DNA from: Octopus sinensis
Lineage: Eukaryota
Assembly (NCBI RefSeq): GCF_006345805.1
Contig: NC_043012.1
Span: 12,338,001 to 12,402,000, forward strand
DNA length: 64,000 nucleotides
Direction of reading: 5' to 3'
In this document: piece after piece, positions 6,829-62,064 of the stretch
How positions within the stretch are numbered: the first letter of the stretch is position 1
How the letters are laid out: every line of letters begins with the position of its first letter
The notes under the pieces: model-generated
Database searches by the model: none
Told to the model about the DNA's origin: nothing
The model's input: the letters and a program-made list of their open reading frames with translations, nothing else
Program-made: the position numbers and the translations under genes

Positions 6829-7644
6829 CGAATTAGAGATAAAACCACTATTATGCAACACAAACAGTGATAGACATAAATAACAAACAATATATAAATT
6901 TATTTATATATTTATTTTTCAAAAAGCATAAAATGAATGATAACTATAATATAATAAGTAAAAACACTAAGTACGTTTCATGGTTATAATTAAATTCGAA
7001 TAACAATTAAGTTTGAATTACCTGTAAGTTTGGAGTTATATTCCCTAATATTACTATTATTATTATTATTATTATTATTATTTTATTATTATTATTATTA
7101 TTATTAGTATTAGTATTATTATTATTATTATTATTGTTGTTGTTGGTGTTGTTGTTGTTGTTGTTATTATTATTATATATATGTGTGTGTGTGCGTGTGT
7201 GTGTGCATGTATTCCGTTCATAACATATGTGTATGATGGTATGATACTTTATTGGAGGAGAGGAAACGACAAAGCATGAGAGGTCATCATGACCCCTGTG
7301 CTTCCAGTGCACCAGAGCTTAGTGTTCAAGGATCGTTTAAATTAACCACCCGAGGGCTTGCCTATATCCCTCACAATTCTCAGAAATGACGAACTGCTAT
7401 CAACCTCATGAATATTGTGCCGTCAACTTATTTCGACTCCTATTAATTGGTGGACATCCGGGTATACAGAGTGTTTTAGGTACAATTAATATAGGAATTA
7501 CCGTTGATTTTACTTTTTCTTCTACATGGAAATACATGCTTAAATAAATACATAGTATGTCGGCCAATCCATTAAGACTGCCATATTTGTTCAAGTCATG
7601 GTTACCAATATTCTGCTTAGAGAAACTCTGTGTGATAGCAGAAT

Positions 7645-8220
7645 CGTTACCGCGCCGGAAAAAAAATGGTTATTAGTATTTCTTCTGGTTTACCGTTCTG
7701 AGTTCCAATGACGCAGGATTCGACTTTGCATTTCGAGTTCGATAAAATAAGAAGCAGTTGAACACTGGGGTCGATTTCTTCGATTCACCCCCTCTTCCAT
7801 AATTTCTGGCGTTGTGCCAAAATATGAAACCATTATTTAAGGCGGTGAGCTCGTAGAATCGTGAGCACGCCGAGCAATATGCTTAGTCGCATTTCGTCCG
7901 CTTTTTTCATTCCGAATTCAAATTGCTTCCAAAGTCGACTTTGTCTTTCATTCATTCGTGGTCGATAGCTGAGCAATGGAGTCGATGTAATCAACTTACC
8001 CCTGCACCAAAATTGATTAAATAAGTACCAGCTACGCACTGGAGACGACATAATCGATTTAATCCGTTTGTCTGTCCTTGTTTGTCCTCTCCGTGTTTAG
8101 CCCCTTGTGGGTAGTAAAGAAATAGGTATTTCGTCTGCCGCTACGTTCTGAGTTCAAATTCCGCCGCGGTCGACTTTGCTTTTCGGATTCGATAAATTAA
8201 GTATCAGTTGCGTACTGGGT
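7645..8220 (+). mobile_element. Cluster of S1 SINEs (old tail-B copies plus a younger truncated tail-A unit and a partial repeat)
   Basis: Recurring head, B box and core motifs; tail B ...ttgtgccaaaatatgaaacc-attatt at about 7830; tail A ends at 8124. Confidence 0.8.
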
Positions 8221-9986: not shown

Positions 9987-10474
9987 CACACTCTCTCACT
10001 GAGTCAATCAAAACGAGTCGGAAAACAATAGCATTGTTCGCTTATAGCTGGTGTCGCTGCAGTAGCATCGGCCGTCTCCTAGGTTTAGAAGTAATATTGT
10101 GTAGAGCAGAGAGAACATAATGTATTTGCTATTTATTGCACACACGCACATACAAAGCACATTGTCTCCTTTTCATAAAAGTTCAAGCGCTCGCTTGAGT
10201 ATGCTTTGCGTATGATGTGTTTTGAGAGAGAGCGCTGAAAGTGAGCAAAGAGAAACAGCGGAAAGGAAAATGAAGGGAATTAAGAAGAAAGATTTGACTA
10301 TTATGGAGATAGATGATCGCATTTAATCTCTTGTATATATTATTGTCTGCACAACAATTATTGTTATTATCATTATCGTTATTTTTATCATTTTGTTCTC
10401 AATCTCATTTTTAGTCCCTCCTACACACTTTATACATCTCTCGCTTCCTCTTTCTCTCTGTCTCTCTTTCTCTC

Positions 10475-10913
<439 letters not shown>

Positions 10914-10914
<1 letters not shown>

Positions 10915-13861
10915 GCCTCAGAGACCTGCTCAGACGCTTTCAACTGTCTGACAGGTTTCGACTAGACCACCCGAATGCGCCAACGTGGACATGGAGCAAC
11001 CGCATCGGGTCGTCGAGATCGTATCTAGATAGGATACTGTGTAGGACAGTAGATAGAGATAGCATAGGATGTCCACAATTCCACATAGTCAGCTACACGG
11101 ATCACAAACTTGTGACATGTACGCTAGACTTAGGTAAGACACTTAGGCAGGGTCCCGGATACTGGAAACTAAACGCGTCTTTCCCATCGAGACAAGTTTT
11201 CAGAGACCGGATTAGCACACTAGTAAAGAGGGCTTTGACGGGAGCCATCATCAACAACAAATGGTGGTTTGCCCTCAAGAGAGCAGTAAAAGCAGAAGCG
11301 ATTAGGTACAGCAAAGCACTAGCCATAGATAGAAATAGAGTAGAGGGTGAGCTAGTTAAGAAGCTAGAAGAGGCAATTAGAAGCGGCATCGCATCCGACG
11401 TTTTGGCGGCGAGGTTGGCCCTCGACCAACACTTCAACGCCAAACACGAAGGATGTGCTGTCAGAGCTAGGATGCGTGCTCTAAGGAACGAAGGTGTTGG
11501 AGCCGCGAGAGAGGCCCGGGTGGCAGAGGCGCAACAGGGCAACAAAGCCACCATTCGGTCACTGGTAGATGAACAGGGGCGCGAATTGCTCGAGCCAAGT
11601 AAAATGTGTGAGGCCTTTCAGCAGCATTTTGCCCGACTGTTCGGAACGAGTGGAGGGCAAGAACGTAGGGGGACTTCAGTGCCTACCTACATAGCCTACC
11701 ACGACTCTCGACAAGAAAGGCAGGGTGCTGCGAAGGTGCCATCACGGCGGCGGAAGTGCGGGAAGCGATGGCAGAATGCTCGAGGGACAAATCACCGGGT
11801 TTGGATGGTCTACCCTACGAGCTTTACAATTGTATGCCAGACTTGTTTGGAGATCTCTTGGCGGCGGTGTACTGCAACTGGCAGCAAAACGGGAGCATTC
11901 CTGGTTTTGTGAGCCGAGGAGCCGTAACACTGCTGAAGAAAGATCTAAACAAGGGAAATGTAATAGATAACTTTAGGCCCATCACTCTGCTTAATGCAGA
12001 CTTGAAAATTTTGGCCAAGGTGCTAGCCAAGAGGTTGGCGCTTGTCATCGAGAAACTGGTCGACAAGGCGCAAACATGCGCCGTGCCAGGCCGGACCATC
12101 CATGACAACCTCCATCTGATGCGCTACATCATAGACAGGGTAGTTAACGAACCTGGCATGGGTGGGGCCCTGATCAACTTGGATCAATCAAAAGCCTTTG
12201 ATAGGGTAGACCATCGATACTTGGAGGCAGTCCTGAGAGCGGCTGGTTTCGGTCCCGTCTTCCGCGGCTGGATAGCTGCCTTGTACAGAGGCATCCGTTC
12301 GGTAATTCGCGTAAATGGACATCTATCGAGACCTTTCGACATTGCACGTTCGGTCCGTCAGGGATGCCCCCTCTCGGCGCTTCTATACGTATTGACTCTT
12401 GAGCCACTACTGCGGAAGCTGGCGACTCTAAGGGGCATCCCGCGAGAATTGGGATGCGGGACGAGCGTGTCTGCATACGCGGACGACGTCACCGTCATAG
12501 TGTCTAGCCACGAGCACATCGAGCTGGTCGGCGAGACACTGAAAAACTACGAAGCGGTGACAGGAGCGAAAATCAACCGGGAAAAGTCAGTGGGCTTGCG
12601 ACTAGGCACCTGGAGAAGCAAGCCCATGCCGTCCACCAGCGCCTCCGTCGTGGGACGCTGGACCGACGGCCCGGTTGAGTTGCTCGGGGTCTGGTTTGGT
12701 CCGGACCTCCAAGTGGAGAAGAACTGGAACGAGATAACGAGTAGGGTGGTCACTCTCGCCCGGCAATGGGCCGAGAGGAAACTGTCCCTAAAAGGTCGAG
12801 CGGAGGTGGCGAACACGTACATCGCGTCCGTCATCTACTACCGCCTGACCGTCGTACCTTGTCCCGACCCTACCATCACCAAACTACAACGCATCCTCTT
12901 TCGCTTCTTGTGGAAAGGATGCGTCCCGATGGTTAGGCGATCCATTTGCTGTCAACACCCGTTAAAAGGAGGGCTTGGCATGCCGTGGTTGATGATGCGC
13001 AGACACGCGCTGAGACTGCGACATCTCTGGCTCTATGTAGACGACGGTGAACAGGTGTGGTCGCCGTTTGTGAGGCACGCTTTCCCGCAGCTCGTCTCCA
13101 TGACCGAACTGCAGTCGTGGATCAAAAAGAGGCCGAGGAAGGGCGAATGGCACCGCGAGTGTCGCGTTGCTCTCAAGCAACTCTGCCGTCCTGGGTCGAC
13201 CTTAAGTGACTTCAACACAACCAAAGCATTCTATAGGGGTTTAGTGGAGGGGAGGTACGACGACGAGCTCGGGGCGAACCTGGACGTCGACGAGGAGTAC
13301 CTGACCCGCCTGTTCGGGACGACTTTCGGGCCAGGGCCCATGGACAACTTCCAGAGATCCCTGGCCTGGCAGTGCTACCGAGAAGCGCTACCCGTTCGGG
13401 ATAAGCTCTACAGACACGGCTCGAGAAACACGGGGCCGACCTGCCCGAGATGCGGTCAGAGCGACGAAACCGTTCTGCACGCACTCGTTCAGTGTCCAAC
13501 AATTTCCGACCTGTGGGCTTATGTCGAACAACTGCTGTCACGTGTGGGACGAGTCGGTTTATCAGCTGAATCTATCGTCAATATTGTCACGCCTCCTTCC
13601 TTCAAACGGGAAGGAAGAGCTATTTTCATCATCCTTGTGGCTATGGCGAAAGAATGTATCTGGTGGACGCGTCTGAAAGGATTGGAGACAAACACTTTCC
13701 TCTCTGGTCAATCTCTCATCAACTTCTTCAAGTACCACTTGAAAAGGAAAGTGAGAGTAGAGAGGCAAGTTTTGTCTAGCGAATGTTTTAAAAAAAGATG
13801 GGTGAATGTAGCAAGAATGGCACGTATGAATGACGAAGCCACCTTGAGCATAGTCCTATGA
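10914..13861 (+). pseudogene. LINE ORF2 (partial EN, RT, zinc knuckle) split by one -1 frameshift at the G5 run 11668-11672
   Basis: Frame 3 is open from 10914 ([27 protein letters not shown]...) to ...QERR. Frame 2 continues [13 protein letters not shown]...[19 protein letters not shown] to TGA at 13859-13861. No other stop seen. Confidence 0.9.
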
Positions 13862-14250
13862 ACCCAGAAATCGAAAACAGAGAGTTGCTTATTTGCAAAA
13901 AAAAAAAAAAAAAAAGAAATATAAAATGTGACTTCATTGACCGAGGTTACCGTGGTCTTTTCTGCAGGCTTTTCTTTCCACGGGTAAACCTCACCTGTCC
14001 TCCCCTTTACACTTCATATTGACATTTCTGTGATAACGATCCCTATTGATCATTTTTTTTTCCTCTCCCCCTTTTTTTTTTTTTTTTTTTTTTTTTAACC
14101 CCCCTTATTTTTGTCCTCTTTCTCTCCTTTTACGATCCCTTTTGATCGAACCTCCCCCTTCCTTTTTTTTTTAATACCTTCAAAAGAAAAGCTCTACCTT
14201 GTAATTTGTTCTATCTGTGTGCAGCCCTGTGTGGCTAATAAAGAAACATA
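10914..14250 (+). mobile_element. 5'-truncated non-LTR retrotransposon, L1 clade / Tx1-like
   Basis: GC-rich island with ORF2: C-terminal APE endonuclease motifs ([18 protein letters not shown]), [10 protein letters not shown] (KSPGLDG, FRPITLLNADLKILAK, DQSKAFDRV, VRQGCPLS, YADD) and zf-RVT CPRC..H..C. The 3' UTR ends AATAAAGAAACA, followed directly by (TATC)n. Confidence 0.95.
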
Positions 14251-14264
14251 TCTATCTATCTGTC

Positions 14265-14300
<36 letters not shown>

Positions 14301-14333
14301 GTCATCTATCTATCTATCTATCATCTATCTATC

Positions 14334-14379
<46 letters not shown>

Positions 14380-14395
14380 TTATCAATCTGTCATC
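14249..14395. repeat. (TATC)n array, right flank of the LINE
   Basis: Same variant units as the left flank. Confidence 0.95.
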
Positions 14396-14876
14396 TCTCA
14401 ATCTCTATACGCACATACATTTTACTTGCATAACCCAGCTGTTCTATCAACACACACATATAGAGGTATATACATATGTGTGTGTTTATATATATATATA
14501 TATATATACACACTCATATATATATATATGCATGTATATGTATATATATGTGTACATATATATATATATGTATGTGTGTGTGTGTGTGTATATATATATA
14601 TAAGTAAATATGTGTGTGTATATGTGTGTGCGTCCAGTGACAAAGAGAGAGAGAGAGAGAGAGAAAATGAGGAGATATATGAGTATACGTTTGTACTAAT
14701 GTATATGCACATAGGACTATATGTGTGTGTGTGTGAGAGAGAGATTGCCCGCGCGCGCGTCTGTGTTTGTGTCCGTGCGTGCATATAGTAAGCGTATGCA
14801 TTTATGTATATATATATATATATATATATAATATACCAGTCTGTTATCCTTCTCTATTTGTTTTCTTCAATTTCAG

Positions 14877-15763: not shown

Positions 15764-17414
15764 ATATATACATACATATATGTATGTATATGTAACACCT
15801 TCTAATGCATCTAAGTGATAAAGTCATCGACAGTGCTCAATAGACAGCTCCATATTAGGATATTTTTAGTTGCAACAGTTGTTTGCAGGAGAATGTGGCA
15901 CAAAATGTTAAACACACAGAAAAATAAAGAAAAGTATTTCAGTGATAGTTTTTAATTAAAAATCTCCGTGACTTTGCTTATTGCTTCTTCGGTTAGTTGC
16001 GAGTTCCACGTTAATTTTCTTTGCGATTGTCATTGGCGTATGAAACACATAGTGGAGTATTTGGTCAATATAAATTGGTTCGAAATCCTGCTCCTTTTAT
16101 AGGATGTCCTATGTAATTATCAACGTTTGTTAAGTCCAAGTAAACCTGTGATAGAAACCATATAAAACATCACCAGGGAATATGTAAGTGTATAAGGTAA
16201 CATGGCTGTATGAAGAGATCCTTTCCATTGTGAAGCAATTTGCAATAGATATGTACACTGAGTATGCCATCCCACCACCAAAAATATTGTCTTTTCTAGG
16301 CTACCAAGTTTTGGTAAATTACCATAGCTGACCAATGTTTTTAAAATATAGAATTTTCACTTTCCAAAATCAAATCAAATTTGAATACTGCATTCTTCAT
16401 TTTCTTTTCTTGTCGTTATTATTTCATGATATTTTTATGTTTAATACAACCCAAAAGAAACCAAAATTCTTCGATGACGGCTATTCCCTTGCATTTTACT
16501 ATCTCTAGTTAAAGGTGATTGGAGCCGAAGTGCACAAAACATTTTACTTTTTGGTATATAGCATAGATTGCTTTCAGAAGCCTATTTATTTCATCACAGA
16601 TGATAGAGCAACACTCATATCATTATCTACATAATTTGACAGCTGGTATGTCCCAATCTTTAACATTTCAGTTATTGTATTTGTTATTGTCTTCATATTT
16701 GTTTGAGCAACTCCCACAAGTTCTTTTTCTTCGTGTCAATTTAAAGGAAAGCAAATAGCTAGTTATGATTTAGTAGATGCATCTGTGTTTTATTGGCCTT
16801 CATTCACTTCAGGTTAGCTACAAATATTGACTGAATTTCTTCTGCACTAAGACTGGTAAATTTATTTTGCATTTGTGATGATAAACACATTCTATTGTTT
16901 TTATATTTCTTCAAATATTTTCAAAATTGGGATAAAACACAATTTTCCACTCAATGGAATCGTGAAAGTTTCTTAAATCTCTGTCAACCTGCAGTTAATT
17001 AATTCAAAGCACGCTAAGCAGCAATGAGTAAAATAAACATCTTTACGTTTGTAATTAACACATCCGTGTACATTCAATTGGAGAAAGGCTTTTGTCAGCA
17101 AATATACTGTTTGCTGTTTACATATAAGAACAAAATACCTTAGTCAAATGTGGACGACTTCTTCGGTGCCTGTAACTGATAATGCGTAGCCATGCATAAA
17201 CACCAACCTTATAGTGTTTTCACACATAATCTACTAAAATAATTTCTCCTCTGAAGCAATTATTGAAGAGAAGGTCTTACTGTGTCTGAGTGAATACCAG
17301 TGTGTTAAATATAAAGGTTTTTGTAAATTTTCGAGTTCCTCTACAATACATGGTCAACAAAGTTTTTGATCAATTGGATAGGTACGTGTAATATTGGTTT
17401 TTAAAGTTTGGCAC

Positions 17415-17822
17415 AAGGCTAGGAACTTTGGCGGAGTTGGGTAAGTCGATTAGATCACCTCAGTGCTGAAGTGGTACTTAATTTATCAACTTCTAAAGGA
17501 TGAAAGGCAAAGCCAACCTTGACGGAATTTGAACTCAGAACGTAAAGACAAACGAAAAGCCGCTAAGCATTTTGTCAAATATCCTAACCATTCTGCCAGC
17601 TCCCCACTTTAAGTATGTGAATTATTAGTTTCACATCTTGGTATAATGCCAGTAATTTTGGGGGAAGGGTAAGTCAATTACGATGAGCCTAGTCCTTAAC
17701 TGGTACTTATTTTATCGACCTCAAAAGAATGAAAGGTATTTGAACTCAGAATATTAAATCGAAAGAATTACCACTAAGCCTTTTTACCCGCACGGTAACG
17801 ATTCTACCAACTCGCCGTCTAA
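17415..17822 (-). mobile_element. Two degraded S1 SINEs
   Basis: Reverse-complement head (ctgccagctc), B box (tttgaactcag) and core (ggtacttattttatcgac) each seen twice. Confidence 0.7.
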
Positions 17823-22081: not shown

Positions 22082-22525
22082 AGACGGCGAGCTGGCAGAA
22101 TCATTAGCACGCTGGACGAAATGCTTAGCGGTAATTCACCCGTCGCTATGTTCTGAGTTCAAATTCCGCCGAGGTCGACTTTGTCTTTCTTGCATTCGGG
22201 GTCGATAAATTAATTACTAATGAAACACTGGCGACAATGAAATCGACTCATCCCCTCCCCCAAAGTGGCTCTCCTTGTGGCAAGATTTGAAGCCATTATT
22301 ATTATGTTTTTTTAAGGTAGTGAGCTGGTAGAATCCTTAATGCGCCGGGCAAGATTCTTAGCAGAAATTAGTCCGTCTCTACTTTTAAATTCAGCTAAGG
22401 TGGACTTTGCCTTTCGTCTGTTTTGGGGTCGATAAAATAAGTACCAGTTGAGCACTGGGGTCGATGTAATCGACATTTCCCCTTATATGAAAATGTTGGG
22501 TTTGTGCCAAAATTTGAAACAATTG
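22082..22525 (+). mobile_element. Two tandem S1 SINEs with tail B ending in (ATT)n/(ATC)n
   Basis: Heads at 22082 and 22314; tails ...gtggcaagatttgaagcc and ...gtgccaaaatttgaaac. Confidence 0.8.
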
Positions 22526-36141: not shown

Positions 36142-36552
36142 AAGGCGGCGAGCTGGCAGAAACGTTAGCGCACCGAGCGAAATGTTTAGCGGTATTTCGT
36201 CTGCCGTTACGGTCTGAGTTCAAATTCTGCGAAGTCGACTTTGCCTTTCATCCTTTCGGGGTCGATTAAATAAGTACCAGTTACGCACTGGGGTCGATAT
36301 CTTAATCGGTTTATCTGTCCTTGTTTGTCCCTTCTGTGTTTAGCCCCTTGTGGGTAGTAAAGAAATAGGTATTTCGGCTGCCGTTAGATTCTGAGTTCAA
36401 ATTCCGCCGAGGTCGACTTTGCCTTTCATCCTTTCGGTCGATAAATAAGGTACCAGTTACGCACTGGGGTCGATGTAATCGACTTAATCCCTTTGTCTGT
36501 CCTTGTTTGTCCCCTCTATGTTTAGCCCCTTGAGGGTAATAAAGAAATAAGA
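36142..36552 (+). mobile_element. SINE family S1, tail type A, dimeric copy
   Basis: Head GGCGGCGAGCTGGCAGAA, B box GAGTTCAAATTC, core GTCGACTTTGCCTTTCATCCTTTCGGGGTCGAT; 17-bp TSD agcagtatatgaaacta (36125-36141 / 36553-36569). Confidence 0.92.
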
Positions 36553-39791: not shown

Positions 39792-39995
39792 AAGGTGGTG
39801 AGTTGTTGGAACTGTTAGCGCGTGGGTCAAAATGCTTTGAGGTATTTCGTCTGCCGTTACATTCTGAGTTCAAATTCCGCCGAGGTCGTCGACTTTGCCT
39901 TTCATTCTTTCGGAGTCGATAAACTAAGTACCAGTTACGCACTGGGGTCGACGTAATCGCCTCAACCCTCCCCCGAATCCTCAAACCTTGTACCT
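39792..39995 (+). mobile_element. S1 SINE, tail B-like
   Basis: Head, B box and core motifs present. Confidence 0.8.
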
Positions 39996-40119
39996 ATAGA
40001 GCAAAGGATTTTTATTGGATATTTTAAGGCAACGAGGACCGACTGTCACGTGAAGGTAGATGTCCAAAATCAGCAGGAAGTCACATGCTTATGGAATACA
40101 TAGATACCCCCCAGCACAC

Positions 40120-43243: not shown

Positions 43244-43474
43244 AGGTGGCGAGCTGGCAGAAACGTGAGCACGCCGGGCGAAATGCGAAGCCGTATTTCG
43301 TCTACCGTTACGTTCTAAGTTCAAATTCCGCCGAGGTCGACTTTGCCTTTCACCCTTTCGGGGCCGATTAAATAAGTAGCAGTTACGCTCTGGAGTCCAT
43401 ATAATCGACTTAATCCCTTTGTCTGTCCTTGTTTGTCCTCTCTGTGTTTAGCCCCTTGTGGGTAGTAAAGAAAT
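43244..43474 (+). mobile_element. SINE family S1, tail A, full length
   Basis: About 20-bp TSD atatatatatac(a/g)ttgtccc. Confidence 0.9.
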
Positions 43475-57083: not shown

Positions 57084-57316
57084 AAGGCGGCGAGCTGGCA
57101 GAAACGTTAGCACGCCGGGCGAAATGCGTAGCCGTATTTCAGCTGTCGATACGTTCCGAGTTCAAATTCCGCCGAGGTCGACTTTGCCTTTCATCCTTTC
57201 GGGGTCGATATATTAAGTACCAGTTACGCACTGGGGTCGATGTAATAGACTTAACCCCTTTGTCTGTCCTTGTTTGTCCCCTCTATGTTTAGCCCCTTGT
57301 GGGCAATAAAGAAATA
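57084..57316 (+). mobile_element. SINE family S1, tail A, full length
   Basis: 16-bp TSD tatataat(c/a)tatgata (57068-57083 / 57317-57332). Confidence 0.9.
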
Positions 57317-59307: not shown

Positions 59308-59745
59308 AAGGCGGTGAGTTGGCCGAGCCTTTAGCACGCCTAGCAAAATGCTTATCGGTATTTCGATCACTTAAGGTGGCGAGCTGGCAGAACCGTTAGC
59401 ACGCCGGGCGAAATGCTTTGCGGTATTTCGTCTGCCGTTACGTTCTGAGTTCAAATTCCGCCGAGGTCGACTTTGCCTTTCATCCTTTCGGGGTTGATAA
59501 ATTAAGTACCAGTTACGCACTGGGGTCGATGCAAGCGACTTAATCCGTTTGTCTGTCCTTGTTTGTCCCCTCTGTGTTTAGCCCCTTGTGGGTAATAATG
59601 AAATAGGTACTTCGCTCATTTTTACATTCTGAGTTCAAATTTCGCCGAAGTCGACTTTCATTCCATAATCTCTTGGTCGATAAAATGAATACCAGTCAAG
59701 CACTAGGTTCGCTGTAATCGGCTTACCCCTCCCCCAGCATTGCTG
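59308..59745 (+). mobile_element. Young S1 tail-A SINE (59373-59605) nested in an older S1 tail-B SINE
   Basis: TSD ggtatttcgatcactt / ggtacttcgctcattt (13 of 16 identical). Confidence 0.85.
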
Positions 59746-62064
59746 TAAGTATATAGCGTTTTACTTTGTTTGCTTTAATTCATTCACTTCATTCATTATA
59801 CATTTAGAGTTCGAATCTTAATTAGTTTCCCTTTTTACGTTTTTCCTGTCTATTTTAATATCTTTCTACCACTTTCTTCCATCCTCTCGTTCCTTCTTTA
59901 ACATTTTTTTCATACTTACCATTCGGAATTTCATATTCTATATATATGTCTCTATCTGTGTATATGTATGGACATATGTGTATGTATACATATGTATTTA
60001 GCGTCCATTACCGTTTTTACACGCTTTCTTTTCTAGACTTTAATCCCCTGCGTCTTATATTGACTTGTCATTCAAATTGCAACTTCAGGACAGAAACTTC
60101 CTTAAAGACTATCCGTTTTGTGTCAAACCATCAGCTCTGCTGTTACGAAGATATTCTAAATTCGAACATATCTTGAGAATTACAGTTTGACGTAGTAAAG
60201 AAAACCAACAAAAAAAAACAATAACAAAAGCGTACATTAAAGTTGACTATTTACGACTGTAATTCGTTATGCGAAGAAACACATGTCAAAGCGTAAATAT
60301 CTAAGCTACTGTTCGTCGCGTGTGTTGTAAGTCCTATGATATATAAAACTTTGTGTCCATAAATCCTATGTTGAACATTAAGTACTATCTTAATTTCAAA
60401 TCAAGTTTGTTTCCATAGCATTTTTGCCATTGTGAATCAAATAGTTACCGATCTTTACCACCTTTCTGTTTCTTGGGTCGTTGTATTCGCTATAGAATTA
60501 GTTCGCAATAGATTTCAATGTTTGTCTAAATTCTCTGCGATAGTTTGATTGGGCTCGGAAATCTTAGTTGCACTTATTTTCCTCCCCAGGATATGGCTTC
60601 ACTTCTCACTCTCCTCGGTGACTAAACTAGCCCAGCAGAGTTTGCTCTGGTTGGCGAGTATTGAATTATATCTTTGCCAGTATTAGGTTTCTCTCCGCCT
60701 GTCATTTAATTGGCCTTGACCTGATACATCACCCTGCCTACCACAAACAGACGAACATGATCTTGTATGGACATGCATTCAAAGCTACCTCACTTACTAA
60801 TCCATTAAGGGTGCTCCCATGTGTTATAACGTTTAAATGGCCTCACCTCTATGCTTTAGCCTCAGCTGGTAAACATAATACGATGCATCACTTACTATCA
60901 TCTCTTAGTCATAGACTAATTCCATATCCTCGATTTTAGGCTGCAATCCTCATAACAGACACACTGGTTACATCCCTGGCCATGCTTTTGTACATAAAGG
61001 TTGGGTCCGGCATAATTGATCGCATTAATATCATCAGTGTTAGAACCTCTGTAAATGATCAAATGTTCTCTGACAATCATAGAAAACGGGGTCACAATAC
61101 ACGGCGAGTTTACATGCTGGTAGTGAAATCTACAGATAAAATATCTCTGTATACTACCTAAACATATTCTGAAATTAGCCAAATCAGCCCAATCCAAATA
61201 TAACCATTTCAGTATGCTGCTAGAATCAGTTGGCAAGAAAACAAGATCAGATACATGTCTAGATTTGAGAAATTAGAACTTGCCATTTTACTTCACCATG
61301 ATGATTAAAAAAAAAAGAGAGAATATTTGTATACCAGTGTGTCCGTTCGTCTGCCTGCCTGTCGCCCTCTCCTCCCTCTCGCGCTCTCCTCCTCCTATCC
61401 TCTGTCTCTCTCTCCCCCCCACTCTCTTTCTTCATTGTAACTGTAAATAAAAAGTTCACTCACATTGTATTATTATAATGCAACCTTTAATGTCCATTTG
61501 CCTGTGGAATTCTGTGCATCAGTCTTTTCCAATGTTCTCTTTCACGAATAACAATTTAGTAGATTCAACTACGGAGTGCTTATCCTGATCATCGATACCA
61601 ACAGACTATCCACTACCATCTATCTCATTGTTTCCGGTGCGATGAAAGGGAGATCTAAAACCGGTGATATTCCAAACCAGAAATGTATTCAGGAGATGAC
61701 TGACCAGTGCTGGACATTTAACACTCTGATGTTTTAAACCTATTAATACATAGCAATTTTGCAGAAATGCTAAGTTATGATAACGTACACAAACCAACAT
61801 CGGTGTCAAGTGGTAAAAAGAACAAACACCAATATCCATGCATGCGCGCACGAACACACACACTCGCTCTCTCATTCACACTCGATGAGCTTCGACACAG
61901 TTTCCATAGTTTCTATATTTACTCATAAGACATTGGTCAGCCTTTTGTCCAAGGTGCCGAGGGGCAGTAGCGGCTGAAGCCGGAACCATGTGGTTGAAAA
62001 GAGAATTCCTTAACCACAGTCTGTGCCTAGTCATGATCTTTCTTTCTTTTTTCTTTCTTTCTCC

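What the first reader, a model, noticed from the sequence alone, without database searches (positions are those of the whole stretch)
14205..14250. The Tx1/L1-like LINE and the S1 tail-A SINE share their 3' end: candidate partner pair
Seen: LINE terminus tttgttctatctgtgtgcagccctgtgtggctaataaagaaa (14205-14246) against the S1-A tail consensus tttgtccYctctgtgtttagccccttgtgggtaRtaaagaaa (copies ending 8124, 36367, about 36550, 43474, 57316 and 59605) gives 35 of 42 identities with no gaps. Both can form a small terminal stem-loop, and neither has a poly(A) tail. Established: stringent LINEs mobilise SINEs that carry the LINE 3' end, whereas mammalian L1 recognises poly(A). Inference: S1-A is mobilised by this LINE or a sister family through stringent 3'-end recognition.
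Basis: partly seen in the sequence, partly recalled or inferred. Interest (0 to 1): 0.75.

Follow-up and report, generated by a model that had tools for sequence, protein, structure and literature searches.

The report
Octopod LINE and SINE share tail
A jumping gene (an L1/Tx1-type LINE) and a short parasitic repeat (SINE) in this octopus-like genome end in the same roughly 50-base hairpin-containing tail, so the SINE most likely borrows the LINE's copying enzyme; this is a well-known trick but apparently an unreported pairing for octopods.

Summary
Window 14205-14246 matches the SINE tail-A consensus at 35/42 positions without gaps. The next-best non-SINE 42-mer on either strand scores 24/42. 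The 42 nt are not a stray SINE fragment. The same terminal motif (CTGTGT..GCC-CTTGT-GGCY-AATAAAGAAA) closes the 3'UTR of four further LINE 3' ends downstream of related ORF2s or their UTRs: three in Argonauta hians and one on a metagenome contig. A fifth copy is degenerate. The UTR of the closest relative (82% aa) is collinear with the window's until its contig ends inside the shared segment. The LINE is an L1-group element: RVT_1 plus zf-RVT, an N-terminal endonuclease remnant, and human L1 ORF2p as best solved-structure match. It is 5'-truncated (10915-14246) and sits inside one (ATCT)n array. The SINE copies have 16-19 bp target duplications and no A-tail. They carry one of two alternative 3' modules, and the LINE similarity begins where the modules diverge. 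Argonauta SINEs carry the Argonauta LINE tail almost exactly. A 4-bp hairpin with a conserved CUUGU loop shows compensatory stem changes. Trans-mobilisation is inferred, not shown. A sister lineage matches the SINE as well as this copy does (40/48 vs 39/47). Verdict: a real stringent-type SINE/LINE pair, a new member of a known kind.

The parts
10915..14246 (+). 5'-truncated copy of an L1-group (L1/Tx1-type) LINE
   Evidence: tblastn of a full-length 1153-aa relative (L007 ORF2) aligns residues 166-414 to 10917-11657 and residues 418-1139 to 11669-13828, so there is one frameshift and the copy starts inside the endonuclease domain. Boundaries were read.
11756..13861 (+). Open 701-aa remnant of ORF2 (reverse transcriptase plus C-terminal zinc domain)
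   Evidence: Pfam RVT_1 E = 4.7e-31 and zf-RVT E = 1.1e-7. The best solved-structure match is human LINE-1 ORF2p at E = 2e-37, against R2 at 1e-18. The closest proteins are cephalopod: 82% P0121, 72% P0001, 65% Argonauta hians P0002.
13862..14246 (+). LINE 3'UTR. It contains an internal A20 run (13897-13916), T-runs and a conserved inverted-repeat block (13936-13995).
   Evidence: [quoted passage not shown] It has the same overall architecture as the UTRs of L002, L003 and L005.
14193..14246 (+). Tail module shared with SINE tail-A (about 54 nt).
   Evidence: 35/42 ungapped. 39/47 over the last 50 nt. Covariance-model hit of 45.6 bits, E = 3e-8.
14223..14236 (+). Terminal hairpin AGCC-CUGUGU-GGCU, followed by AAUAAA (14237-14242) and GAAA
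   Evidence: Minimum-free-energy fold. Stem pair table across LINE and SINE tails. Pair counts of 90.6% paired, with 0 of 500 shuffles reaching that value.
10446..10914 (.). Upstream half of the (ATCT)n microsatellite into which the LINE inserted
   Evidence: The private variant unit CTGTCATCTATC occurs 4 times here, 2 times in the downstream half, and 0 times in the five other (ATCT)n arrays of the window.
14247..14404 (.). Downstream half of the same (ATCT)n array. Part of it could instead be the LINE's own 3' repeat.
   Evidence: A possible 16-nt duplication TATCTATCTATCT(A/G)TC lies at both junctions.
43244..43473 (+). SINE copy with tail-A (full length, 230 bp)
   Evidence: 92.6% identical to the consensus. 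Flush 19-bp target-site duplication TATATATATAC(A/G)TTGTCCC.
57085..57314 (+). SINE copy with tail-A. Its stem variant GCCC/GGGC is fully Watson-Crick.
   Evidence: 94.3% identical to the consensus. 16-bp target-site duplication. Stem read.
36143..36547 (+). SINE tail-A dimer: a full copy (36143-36365), then TA, then a copy lacking the first 48 nt (36368-36547), inserted as one unit
   Evidence: BLAST. A single perfect 17-bp duplication AGCAGTATATGAAACTA flanks the whole dimer.
59374..59603 (+). SINE tail-A copy nested inside an older tail-B-type SINE (59309-59365 and 59606-59750)
   Evidence: 96.1% identical to the consensus. The host SINE sequence GGTA(T/C)TTCG is duplicated at both sides.
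7840..8122 (+). SINE tail-A copy with an internal ~50-nt insertion. It abuts other SINE fragments on both sides.
   Evidence: No clean target-site duplication was found.
22082..22306 (+). Context: a SINE copy with the same head and body but the alternative tail-B (...GGCTCTCCTTGTGGCAAGATTTGAAGCC(ATT)n). Other tail-B copies lie at about 7638-7838, 17380-17572 (-) and 39810-40000.
   Evidence: Alignment A2 shows the A and B copies sharing consensus positions 1 to ~175 and then diverging. Sequence read.

Best explanation
The window holds a 5'-truncated copy of an octopod L1-group (L1/Tx1-type) non-LTR retrotransposon. The family's 3'UTR ends in a conserved module of about 50 nt. This module consists of a pyrimidine-rich lead-in (..UCUGUGU..), a 4-bp hairpin with a conserved CUUGU-type loop, and then AAUAAAGAAA.

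The abundant ~230-bp SINE of the same genome carries a copy of this module as one of two interchangeable 3' ends (tail-A). The most likely mechanism is stringent-type target-primed reverse transcription. The LINE's ORF2 protein recognises the terminal hairpin and tail on its own RNA. The SINE transcript, presumably made by Pol III, presents the same tail and is reverse-transcribed and inserted in trans.

What is shown:
- the homology and its co-terminal position;
- that the tail is integral to the LINE family and conserved across octopod genera;
- that the SINE copies are retroposed units with 16-19 bp duplications and no A-tail;
- that the tail is a swappable module;
- that Argonauta SINEs carry the Argonauta LINE tail;
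- that the stem covaries.

What is inferred:
- that the ORF2 protein binds this hairpin;
- that mobilisation happens in trans;
- that the tail moved from LINE to SINE;
- which LINE subfamily is the actual driver.
For: (1) The match is 35/42 ungapped, against a background maximum of 24/42. It lies at the exact 3' end of both elements.

(2) The tail is part of the LINE.
- Argonauta hians ORF2 relative P0002 (65% aa) has a ~270-nt UTR ending TTCTGTGTCAGCCAGGTGGCTAAGAAAGAAA.
- A UTR-only 5'-truncated copy lies next to it and ends TTCTGTGTCGGCCCTTGTGGCTAATAAAGAAA.
- Metagenome contig L003 (72% aa) ends GGGCCCTTGTGGCCAATAAAAGAAA followed by (ATT)n.
- A third Argonauta lineage, L024, ends GTCCCCTCTATGTTTTTGCCCTTGTGGCTAATAAAAGAAA.
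- The UTR of L023 (82% aa) is collinear with the window's up to its contig end, which falls inside the shared segment.

(3) The SINE is modular. Tail-A and tail-B copies share positions 1 to ~175 and then diverge. The LINE similarity starts at that breakpoint.

(4) The pair recurs in Argonauta. SINE tails there (TTCTGTGTTCGGCCCTTGTGGCTAATAGAGAAA) match the Argonauta LINE tail at 41-42 of 45-47 positions. A second, short SINE made of a tRNA-like head plus this tail also carries it. The covariance model finds at least 20 tails in 23 kb of Argonauta DNA.

(5) The hairpin pairs in 90.6% of cells, and 0 of 500 shuffles reach that value. Slid controls give at most 62%. Double-sided changes keep pairing: G-C to C-G in the window SINE, GACC/GGTC and GGTC/GATT in Argonauta copies, and C-G to G-C in decapod relatives. 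The CUUGU loop is kept even in LINE relatives with 46% aa identity.

(6) The SINE copies have duplications of 19, 16 and 17 bp and no A-tail.

(7) Stringent recognition of a 3' stem-loop, and SINE parasitism through a shared tail, are established for other LINEs (PMC4176376, PMC3472496, PMC3747384).
Against: - No experiment or population data show mobilisation.
- Only one LINE copy is in the window, so ages of LINE and SINE cannot be compared.
- The window LINE differs from the SINE in the loop (CUGUGU against CUUGU) and in one stem pair.
- A sister lineage known only from Argonauta matches the SINE tail slightly better (40/48 against 39/47). This particular subfamily may therefore not be the driver.
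- The hairpin is only 4 bp, and its folding energy is no better than that of shuffled sequence.
- The pair counts come from an alignment fitted to the model. The six C-G cells are one inherited event.
- The SINE head gives no tRNA hit, so Pol III transcription is inferred from a B-box-like motif only.
Confidence: 0.8

Rival explanations
1. The partner is a sister subfamily rather than the subfamily of the copy at 10915-14246. The SINE tail was copied from, and is recognised by, a related lineage of the same octopod LINE family. The window copy is only a cousin.
For: - The window SINE tail matches the Argonauta L024 lineage at 40/48 and the Ahia2 lineage at 39/48, against 39/47 for the window LINE.
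- The SINE loop CUUGU is that of the L024, L003 and Ahia2 lineages, not the window LINE's CUGUGU.
- The upstream stretch GTCCCCTCT(A/G)TGTTT is identical in the SINE and L024.
Against: - L024 comes from another genus, and no such lineage has been seen in this genome.
- The differences amount to 1-2 positions, which is within noise for about 50 nt.
- No known LINE tail has the SINE's GCCC/GGGU stem.
Confidence: 0.45
2. The tail is a relic. The SINE once took its tail from this LINE family but is now, or was mainly, mobilised by an unrelated LINE. Alternatively, it is no longer mobile.
For: - Octopus genomes hold active RTE, CR1 and Dong-R4 LINEs as well (PMC13282606, PMC9115989).
- SINE-A copies in the window are 4-9% diverged from their consensus.
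Against: - The tail is the best-conserved part of the copies. All six score 40-42 of 42.
- The stem variants keep pairing.
- The SINE ends exactly at the LINE-type terminus.
- In Argonauta the SINE tail tracks the local LINE tail. That implies continued selection by this LINE family.
Confidence: 0.08
3. The direction is reversed, or the tail is a chimera. The 42 nt at the LINE end would be a SINE fragment that landed there, or the LINE family captured its terminus from a SINE.
For: SINEs are extremely dense in this genome and nest into each other.
Against: - Four further LINE 3' ends carry the motif as the last ~30-50 nt of their UTRs, 230-280 nt after the stop codon or UTR start.
- No SINE body sequence precedes it in the window.
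- L023 is collinear with the window's UTR through the junction.
- Decapodiform LINE relatives keep the same CUUGU hairpin. SINEs are reported to be scarce in those genomes (PMC8967140).
- The AAUAAA signal is intact in four of the five intact LINE tails but decayed in SINE tails.
Confidence: 0.04
4. The match is chance similarity between two AT-rich, low-complexity ends.
For: The region is pyrimidine- and A-rich, and the window is 64% A+T.
Against: - 35/42 against a background maximum of 24/42 over ~128,000 positions.
- A 16-mer with up to 2 mismatches is expected 0.15 times and is found 7 times, only at these elements.
- The motif recurs in other genomes.
Confidence: 0.01

Closest known systems
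UnaL2/UnaSINE1 of eel and ZfL2 of zebrafish: stringent-type LINEs whose ORF2 protein recognises a conserved 3' stem-loop (Kajikawa & Okada 2002, cited in PMC4494074; PMC4176376)
   Same: - The SINE and LINE share a co-terminal 3' tail of about 50 nt.
- The hairpin is small, with a conserved loop and a variable, covarying stem.
- There is no poly(A).
- Short repeats follow the tail: (ATCT)n or (ATT)n here, (TGTAA)n in UnaL2.
   Different: - Those are L2-clade LINEs of vertebrates. This one is an L1-group LINE of a cephalopod.
- The tail sequence is unrelated.
- Recognition and trans-mobilisation were shown by assay there and are only inferred here.
L1-clade stringent pairs: maize LINE1-1_ZM with ZmSINE2/ZmSINE3, and Chlamydomonas L1-1_CR with SINEX-3_CR (Ohshima 2012, PMC3472496)
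   Same: - An L1-group LINE has a conserved ~45-50 nt 3' end that forms a hairpin with compensatory changes and is shared with SINEs.
- It shows that L1-group elements are not all poly(A)-recognising.
   Different: - Those are plant and green-alga elements, and the alga pair ends in poly(A). In that 2012 survey only 3 of 58 SINE/LINE pairs involved the L1 clade, and none was from an animal.
- The present pair is from an animal, and its tail contains AAUAAA.
Tx1-clade LINEs and their dependants: Tx1-Mar with SINEU in crocodilians, and the microsatellite-specific Kibi and Koshi (Kojima 2015, PMC4494074)
   Same: - Both are L1-group elements related to Tx1.
- The window copy sits inside a microsatellite, as Kibi, Koshi and the crocodilian Tx1 group do.
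- Both are proposed to drive SINEs.
   Different: - The SINEU/Tx1-Mar link rests on shared target preference, not on a shared tail.
- Here the link is a shared tail, and target specificity rests on a single LINE copy.
- Tx1-clade membership of this LINE was not tested phylogenetically.
Mammalian L1 with Alu/B1 (relaxed, poly(A)-dependent mobilisation)
   Same: The RT is most similar to L1 ORF2p among solved structures. The architecture is endonuclease plus RT. Target duplications are about 16-19 bp.
   Different: Neither the LINE nor the SINE has a poly(A) tail, and the two share a specific tail sequence.
Mosaic, tail-swapping SINEs of molluscs (PMC4758252, PMC11481361)
   Same: The same head and body are combined with alternative LINE-derived tails (tail-A and tail-B here).
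   Different: The partners named in the passages read of the bivalve study are Nimb, CR1-Zenon and an I-type LINE, and a term search found no mention of Tx1 there. Here both tails resemble lineages of one L1-group family.

Membership tests
SINE/LINE partner pair with a shared 3' tail (stringent type) | The 3' end of the SINE is homologous to, and co-terminal with, the 3' end of a LINE of the same genome | tested here: met
   35/42 ungapped against a background maximum of 24/42. 39/47 over the last 50 nt. Both elements end at ...TAAAGAAA.
SINE/LINE partner pair with a shared 3' tail (stringent type) | The shared segment is an integral, conserved part of the LINE 3'UTR in independent copies or relatives | tested here: met
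   It is present at the UTR terminus of L002 (two copies), L003 and L024. L023 is collinear with the window's UTR into the segment. L005 has a degenerate version.
SINE/LINE partner pair with a shared 3' tail (stringent type) | The SINE is a short, non-coding, multicopy retroposed unit with target-site duplications | tested here: met
   Six tail-A copies of about 230 bp that are 91-96% identical to their consensus. Duplications of 19, 16 and 17 bp.
SINE/LINE partner pair with a shared 3' tail (stringent type) | The tail holds a conserved stem-loop supported by compensatory changes | tested here: met
   A 4-bp stem with 90.6% of cells paired, 0 of 500 shuffles as high, and slid controls of at most 62%. 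Double changes were seen at three of the four pairs. Caveats: the stem is short, the alignment was fitted to the model, and the folding energy is not exceptional.
SINE/LINE partner pair with a shared 3' tail (stringent type) | The LINE protein mobilises the SINE in trans, and this depends on the tail | not testable with these tools
   This needs a retrotransposition assay.
SINE/LINE partner pair with a shared 3' tail (stringent type) | LINE and SINE amplified over the same period | not testable with these tools
   There is one LINE copy in 64 kb. The host genome is not searchable here, and a pattern scan of the metagenome collection gave only chance hits.
L1-group non-LTR retrotransposon (L1/Tx1) | ORF2 has an N-terminal APE-type endonuclease, an RT, and a C-terminal zinc-binding domain | tested here: met
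   The window copy has RVT_1 plus zf-RVT. An endonuclease remnant aligns from residue 166 of a full-length relative. That relative has Exo_endo_phos plus RVT_1 plus zf-RVT, and an ORF1 with a weak CCHC knuckle.
L1-group non-LTR retrotransposon (L1/Tx1) | The RT is closer to L1-group than to other clades | tested here: inconclusive
   Among solved structures, L1 ORF2p gives E = 2e-37 and R2 gives 1e-18. The PDB, however, holds no RTE, CR1, Jockey or Tx1 proteins. No RT phylogeny with reference clades was possible. Published octopus annotations list L1-Tx1 as the only L1-group superfamily among the LINE types they name (PMC13282606, PMC8967140).
Tx1 clade specifically | Sequence-specific insertion (into repeats, multicopy genes or microsatellites) | tested here: inconclusive
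   The one window copy lies inside a single (ATCT)n array with private variants on both sides. Relatives are followed by TCTAT or (ATT)n. The sample is too small, and the repeats may be the element's own tail.
tRNA-derived SINE | The 5' head is derived from a tRNA and has A and B boxes | tested here: inconclusive
   ARAGORN and Rfam give no tRNA hit on the window SINE, even at E <= 10. Only a B-box-like GAGTTCAAATTCC is visible. A short Argonauta SINE with the same tail gives a sub-threshold full-length tRNA match (21.8 bits).
Relaxed, poly(A)-dependent L1 mobilisation (Alu/B1 type) | LINE and SINE end in poly(A) and share no other 3' sequence | tested here: not met
   Neither ends in poly(A). 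The A20 run at 13897-13916 is internal to the UTR. A specific tail is shared.

The most novel reading that the evidence does not exclude
A cephalopod-wide L1/Tx1-type LINE family uses stringent recognition of a 3' hairpin with a conserved CUUGU loop. Different lineages of this one family would have supplied both tail modules (A and B) of the dominant octopod SINEs. If so, the octopus-specific SINE expansion (about 12% of the genome) was driven largely by this LINE family. It would also be the first animal example of a stringent L1-group SINE/LINE partnership. It may further involve homing to TAT-containing or (ATCT)n/(ATT)n microsatellite targets through the tail repeats.
Probability: 0.35. 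Interest if true: 0.6.

Novelty: new member of a known kind. Interest (0 to 1): 0.42.

Why it matters
SINEs are reported to make up about 12% of an octopus genome and to be enriched in brain transcripts. In the recent repeat annotations I could read, most are listed as 'unclassified' and no LINE partner is discussed (PMC13282606, PMC8967140, PMC9115989). Naming the LINE family whose tail they carry tells which reverse transcriptase most likely drove that expansion. It also gives a concrete RNA element to test: a hairpin with a CUUGU loop followed by AAUAAAGAAA.

The pair also adds an animal case to the very short list of L1-group LINEs that appear to recognise a specific 3' end rather than poly(A). 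That survey found 3 such pairs out of 58, all from plants or algae (PMC3472496). This bears on whether stringent recognition is ancestral for the L1 group. The principle itself, a SINE borrowing a LINE tail, has been textbook knowledge since 1996-2002.

Tried and rejected
- **Metagenome pattern scan.** I scanned the JGI metagenome collection for CCYKTGTGGSYARTAAAGAAA to collect more LINE and SINE tails. The 12 hits were all unrelated chance matches with no upstream tail context. This used the only scan of that collection.
- **LINE ending at the A20 run.** I considered that the LINE ends at 13897-13916 and that the rest is foreign. Rejected: L023 is collinear across and beyond that point and has no A-run there.
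- **Folding energy as evidence for the hairpin.** Z-scores run from -0.05 to -1.5, so this is not informative.
- **tRNA origin of the window SINE head.** ARAGORN and Rfam find nothing.
- **Contigs that end too early.** L001 (72% aa) and L022 stop before the LINE terminus. P0007 is not on record.
- **The Petrosino et al. octopus brain LINE.** It is an RTE element, not this family.
- **Recurrent SINE 'dimers' as a dimeric family.** One is a true unit with a single duplication. One is a nested insertion with its own duplication. One is unresolved.
- **Lower stem (UCU/UGU with AUA/AGA).** It is predicted in several tails. Its sequence is nearly invariant and MAFFT registers it inconsistently, so I make no covariation claim for it.
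- **Species identity of the window.** Not determined. Its own ORF is not in the protein collection.

Full report
**1. What is at the coordinates**

Window 14205-14246 reads tttgttctatctgtgtgcagccctgtgtggctaataaagaaa and is followed by CAT and an (ATCT)n array. The six SINE tails score 40-42, this site scores 35, and the best of the remaining ~128,000 positions scores 24. BLAST of a 230-nt SINE consensus against the window recovers the same pair (E = 6e-4). A 16-mer from the tail with up to 2 mismatches is expected 0.15 times and occurs 7 times, only at these elements. The six tail-A ends are at 8122, 36365, 36547, 43473, 57314 and 59603, all on the + strand.

**2. The upstream element is a LINE, and the 42 nt are its true end**

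- The ORF at 11756-13861 (701 aa) has RVT_1 and zf-RVT.
- Its best solved-structure relative is human L1 ORF2p (E = 2e-37; R2 scores 1e-18).
- A full-length 1153-aa relative has endonuclease, RT and zf-RVT domains, and an ORF1 with a weak CCHC knuckle. It aligns to the window from its residue 166, starting at 10917, with one frameshift near 11660.
- The copy therefore spans 10915-14246 and is 5'-truncated, as LINE copies usually are.
- Its nearest proteins are cephalopod: 82% (P0121), 72-74% (P0001, P0003, P0004) and 65% and 60% (Argonauta hians P0002 and P0123).
- Published octopus repeat annotations list L1-Tx1 among the LINE superfamilies present, and name no other L1-group type (PMC13282606, PMC8967140). 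I could not run an RT phylogeny, so Tx1 versus L1 proper stays open.

The key test was whether other copies of the LINE carry the tail. They do.

- Downstream of the Argonauta ORF2 (L002), the UTR ends ...TTCTGTGTCAGCCAGGTGGCTAAGAAAGAAA.
- A neighbouring UTR-only, 5'-truncated copy ends ...TTCTGTGTCGGCCCTTGTGGCTAATAAAGAAA.
- Contig L003 ends ...GGGCCCTTGTGGCCAATAAAAGAAA followed by (ATT)n.
- A third Argonauta lineage (L024) ends ...GTCCCCTCTATGTTTTTGCCCTTGTGGCTAATAAAAGAAA followed by (ATT)4.
- L005 has a degenerate version.
- The UTR of the closest relative, L023, is collinear with the window's UTR block by block until its contig stops inside the shared segment. It has no A-run where the window has A20 at 13897-13916.

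The LINE therefore does not end at that A-run, and the tail is not a stray SINE fragment. No SINE body sequence precedes it.

**3. The SINE**

The ~230-bp element is multicopy, with copies 91-96% identical to their consensus. It is flanked by target-site duplications:
- 19 bp at 43244-43473;
- 16 bp at 57085-57314;
- 17 bp, perfect, around the dimer 36143-36547.

It ends at GAAA, or GAAATA, with no A-tail. It is modular. A second set of copies shares the head and body up to consensus position ~175 and then carries a different end, tail-B...CCCCAAAATTGCTGGCCTTGTGCCAAGATTTGAAACC(ATT)n. The similarity to the LINE begins at this A/B breakpoint. That is what one expects if tail-A is a captured LINE module. 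ARAGORN and Rfam do not recognise a tRNA in the head. Only a B-box-like motif is visible, so 'tRNA-derived' is unproven here.

**4. The pair recurs in another genus and the tails track each other**

The two Argonauta loci contain SINEs whose body is homologous to the window SINE. Their tails (TTCTGTGTTCGGCCCTTGTGGCTAATAGAGAAA) match the Argonauta LINE tail at 41-42 of 45-47 positions. A second, short SINE consists of a tRNA-like head (21.8 bits, sub-threshold) joined directly to the same tail. It occurs three times in tandem. A covariance model of the tail finds at least 20 copies in 23 kb of Argonauta DNA, and in the window only the six SINE tails and the LINE.

The window SINE tail is about equally close to three LINE lineages:
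- the window LINE (39/47);
- the Ahia2 lineage (39/48);
- the L024 lineage (40/48).

The family is identified but the subfamily is not.

**5. The hairpin**

All tails can form a 4-bp stem around a 4-6 nt loop, followed by AAUAAAGAAA or a close variant (A[AG]UAAAGAAA, AAUAGAGAAA). The stems seen are:
- AGCC/GGCU, GGCC/GGCU, GGCC/GGCC and UGCC/GGCU (a U·U outer mismatch) in LINE tails;
- GCCC/GGGU and GCCC/GGGC in the window SINE;
- GACC/GGUC and GGUC/GAUU in Argonauta copies;
- GGC/GCC in decapodiform LINE relatives with 46% aa identity (L006, L021, and L008 from Acanthosepion pharaonis). These keep the CUUGU loop about 35 nt from their ends.

On the model-fitted alignment, 90.6% of cells pair. 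None of 500 shuffles reaches that value, and sliding the partner by one column drops it to 45-62%. There are caveats. The stem is short. The alignment leans towards the model. The six C-G cells are one inherited change. Folding energies are unremarkable. A conserved loop with a variable, compensated stem is the signature described for stringent LINE tails (PMC3472496, PMC4176376).

**6. Mechanism proposed**

I propose stringent-type target-primed reverse transcription. The ORF2 protein recognises the terminal hairpin and tail on LINE RNA. The SINE RNA presents the same module and is copied in trans.

Two side observations fit this.
- The tail contains AAUAAA. It is intact in four of the five intact LINE tails (window, Ahia2, L003, L024). 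It is AGUAAA in three of the six window SINE copies and AAUAGA or AACAGA in the Argonauta SINEs. This is expected if the signal serves only the Pol II-transcribed LINE, and it suggests the tail moved from LINE to SINE.
- The sequence just after GAAA contains TAT within about 7 nt in every case: TATAT.., TAGGTAT.., CATATCTATC.., and TCTAT.. in Argonauta. This hints at a common nick-site or tail repeat. The numbers are too small for a logo.

**7. Target**

The LINE lies inside one (ATCT)n array. The variant unit CTGTCATCTATC occurs four times upstream, twice downstream, and never in the five other (ATCT)n arrays of the window. This is reminiscent of microsatellite-specific Tx1 elements (PMC4494074), but it rests on one copy.

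**8. Comparison with known systems and novelty**

Shared SINE/LINE tails and stringent recognition are established (PMC3747384, PMC4176376). Within the L1 group they are rare. A 2012 survey found 3 of 58 pairs, all from plants or algae (PMC3472496). SINEU was linked to Tx1-Mar by target preference, not by tail (PMC4494074). I found no paper assigning a LINE partner to octopus SINEs. Repbase and Dfam could not be consulted, so prior curation cannot be excluded. I rate this a new member of a known kind: well supported, moderately interesting, and useful for understanding the octopod SINE expansion.

**9. What led nowhere**

These are listed in full under Tried and rejected. The main ones were the metagenome pattern scan (chance hits only), contigs that end before the LINE terminus, and the tRNA searches on the SINE head.

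Noticed in passing
window 7638-7838, 17380-17572 (-), 22082-22306, 39810-40000; L006:6610-6677, L008:6040-6107, L021:7120-7190: The SINE's alternative tail-B (...TGGCCTTGTGCCAAGATTTGAAACC(ATT)n) carries a hairpin (UGGC-CUUGU-GCCA). This hairpin resembles the one near the 3' end of decapodiform relatives of the same LINE family (GGCCTTGTGCC; BLAST 18/19, E = 0.006). Both SINE tails may therefore come from lineages of one LINE family.
   Followed up: partly
window 10446-10914 and 14247-14404: The LINE copy splits a single (ATCT)n microsatellite. Private variant units are shared by the two halves and are absent from the five other (ATCT)n arrays. This may reflect microsatellite targeting, as in some Tx1 elements, or it may be chance (the arrays cover about 3% of the window).
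   Followed up: partly
window 8122/8125, 36365/36368, 59603/59606: Three of the six tail-A ends abut the same sequence, TA+GGTATTTCG (position ~47 of the SINE). One case is a nested insertion into an older SINE with its own duplication. One is a dimer that moved as a unit with a single 17-bp duplication. One is unresolved. This suggests an insertion hot-spot inside the SINE, or read-through transcription producing dimers.
   Followed up: partly
window 8122-59603 and 10915-14246: All six tail-A SINE copies and the LINE are on the + strand. That is about 5 independent SINE events, so chance is roughly 0.06. Strand bias within a transcription unit is possible.
   Followed up: no
window 14237-14242; SINE tails at 8113-8118, 36356-36361, 43464-43469; L002 SINE tails: The polyadenylation hexamer AATAAA inside the tail is intact in four of the five intact LINE tails. 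It is AGTAAA in 3 of the 6 window SINE copies and AATAGA or AACAGA in the Argonauta SINEs.
   Followed up: partly
window 13936-13995: This is the most conserved block of the LINE 3'UTR, about 93% identical to L023. It contains an ~11-bp inverted repeat, GGTTACCGTGG...CCACGGGTAAACC. It may be a second structured element.
   Followed up: no
L024:900-1362: An Argonauta short SINE (~157 bp) consists of a tRNA-like head joined directly to the LINE tail. It is present as three head-to-tail copies, each inserted right after the previous copy's ...GAGAAATCTATTTG.
   Followed up: partly
L003:2010-2105; L024:847-899 and 7189-7205: LINE and SINE tails of the 'AATAAAAGAA' lineage are followed by (ATT)n, up to 17.7 or more than 30 units. 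The window/Ahia2 lineage is followed by (A)TCTAT or (ATCT)n. The tail repeats appear to be lineage-specific.
   Followed up: no
protein P0007: An NCBI protein labelled 'MAG: zinc-binding domain-containing protein [Herbaspirillum sp.]' is 64% identical to the C-terminal part of this octopod LINE ORF2. This is probably eukaryotic contamination in a bacterial metagenome-assembled genome.
   Followed up: no
L006 and L007 (ERZ21867824 ctg122906l): Two identical full-length copies of the decapodiform LINE relative (ORF1 plus a 1153-aa ORF2) lie in tandem, 6596 bp apart.
   Followed up: no
window 13897-13916, 14048-14097, 14163-14172: There are long homopolymer runs inside the LINE 3'UTR (A20, about T25, T10) and an internal duplication (acgatccc(t/a)ttgatc...). 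The 82% relative lacks the A-run and the long T-run, so these are copy-specific or subfamily-specific expansions.
   Followed up: partly
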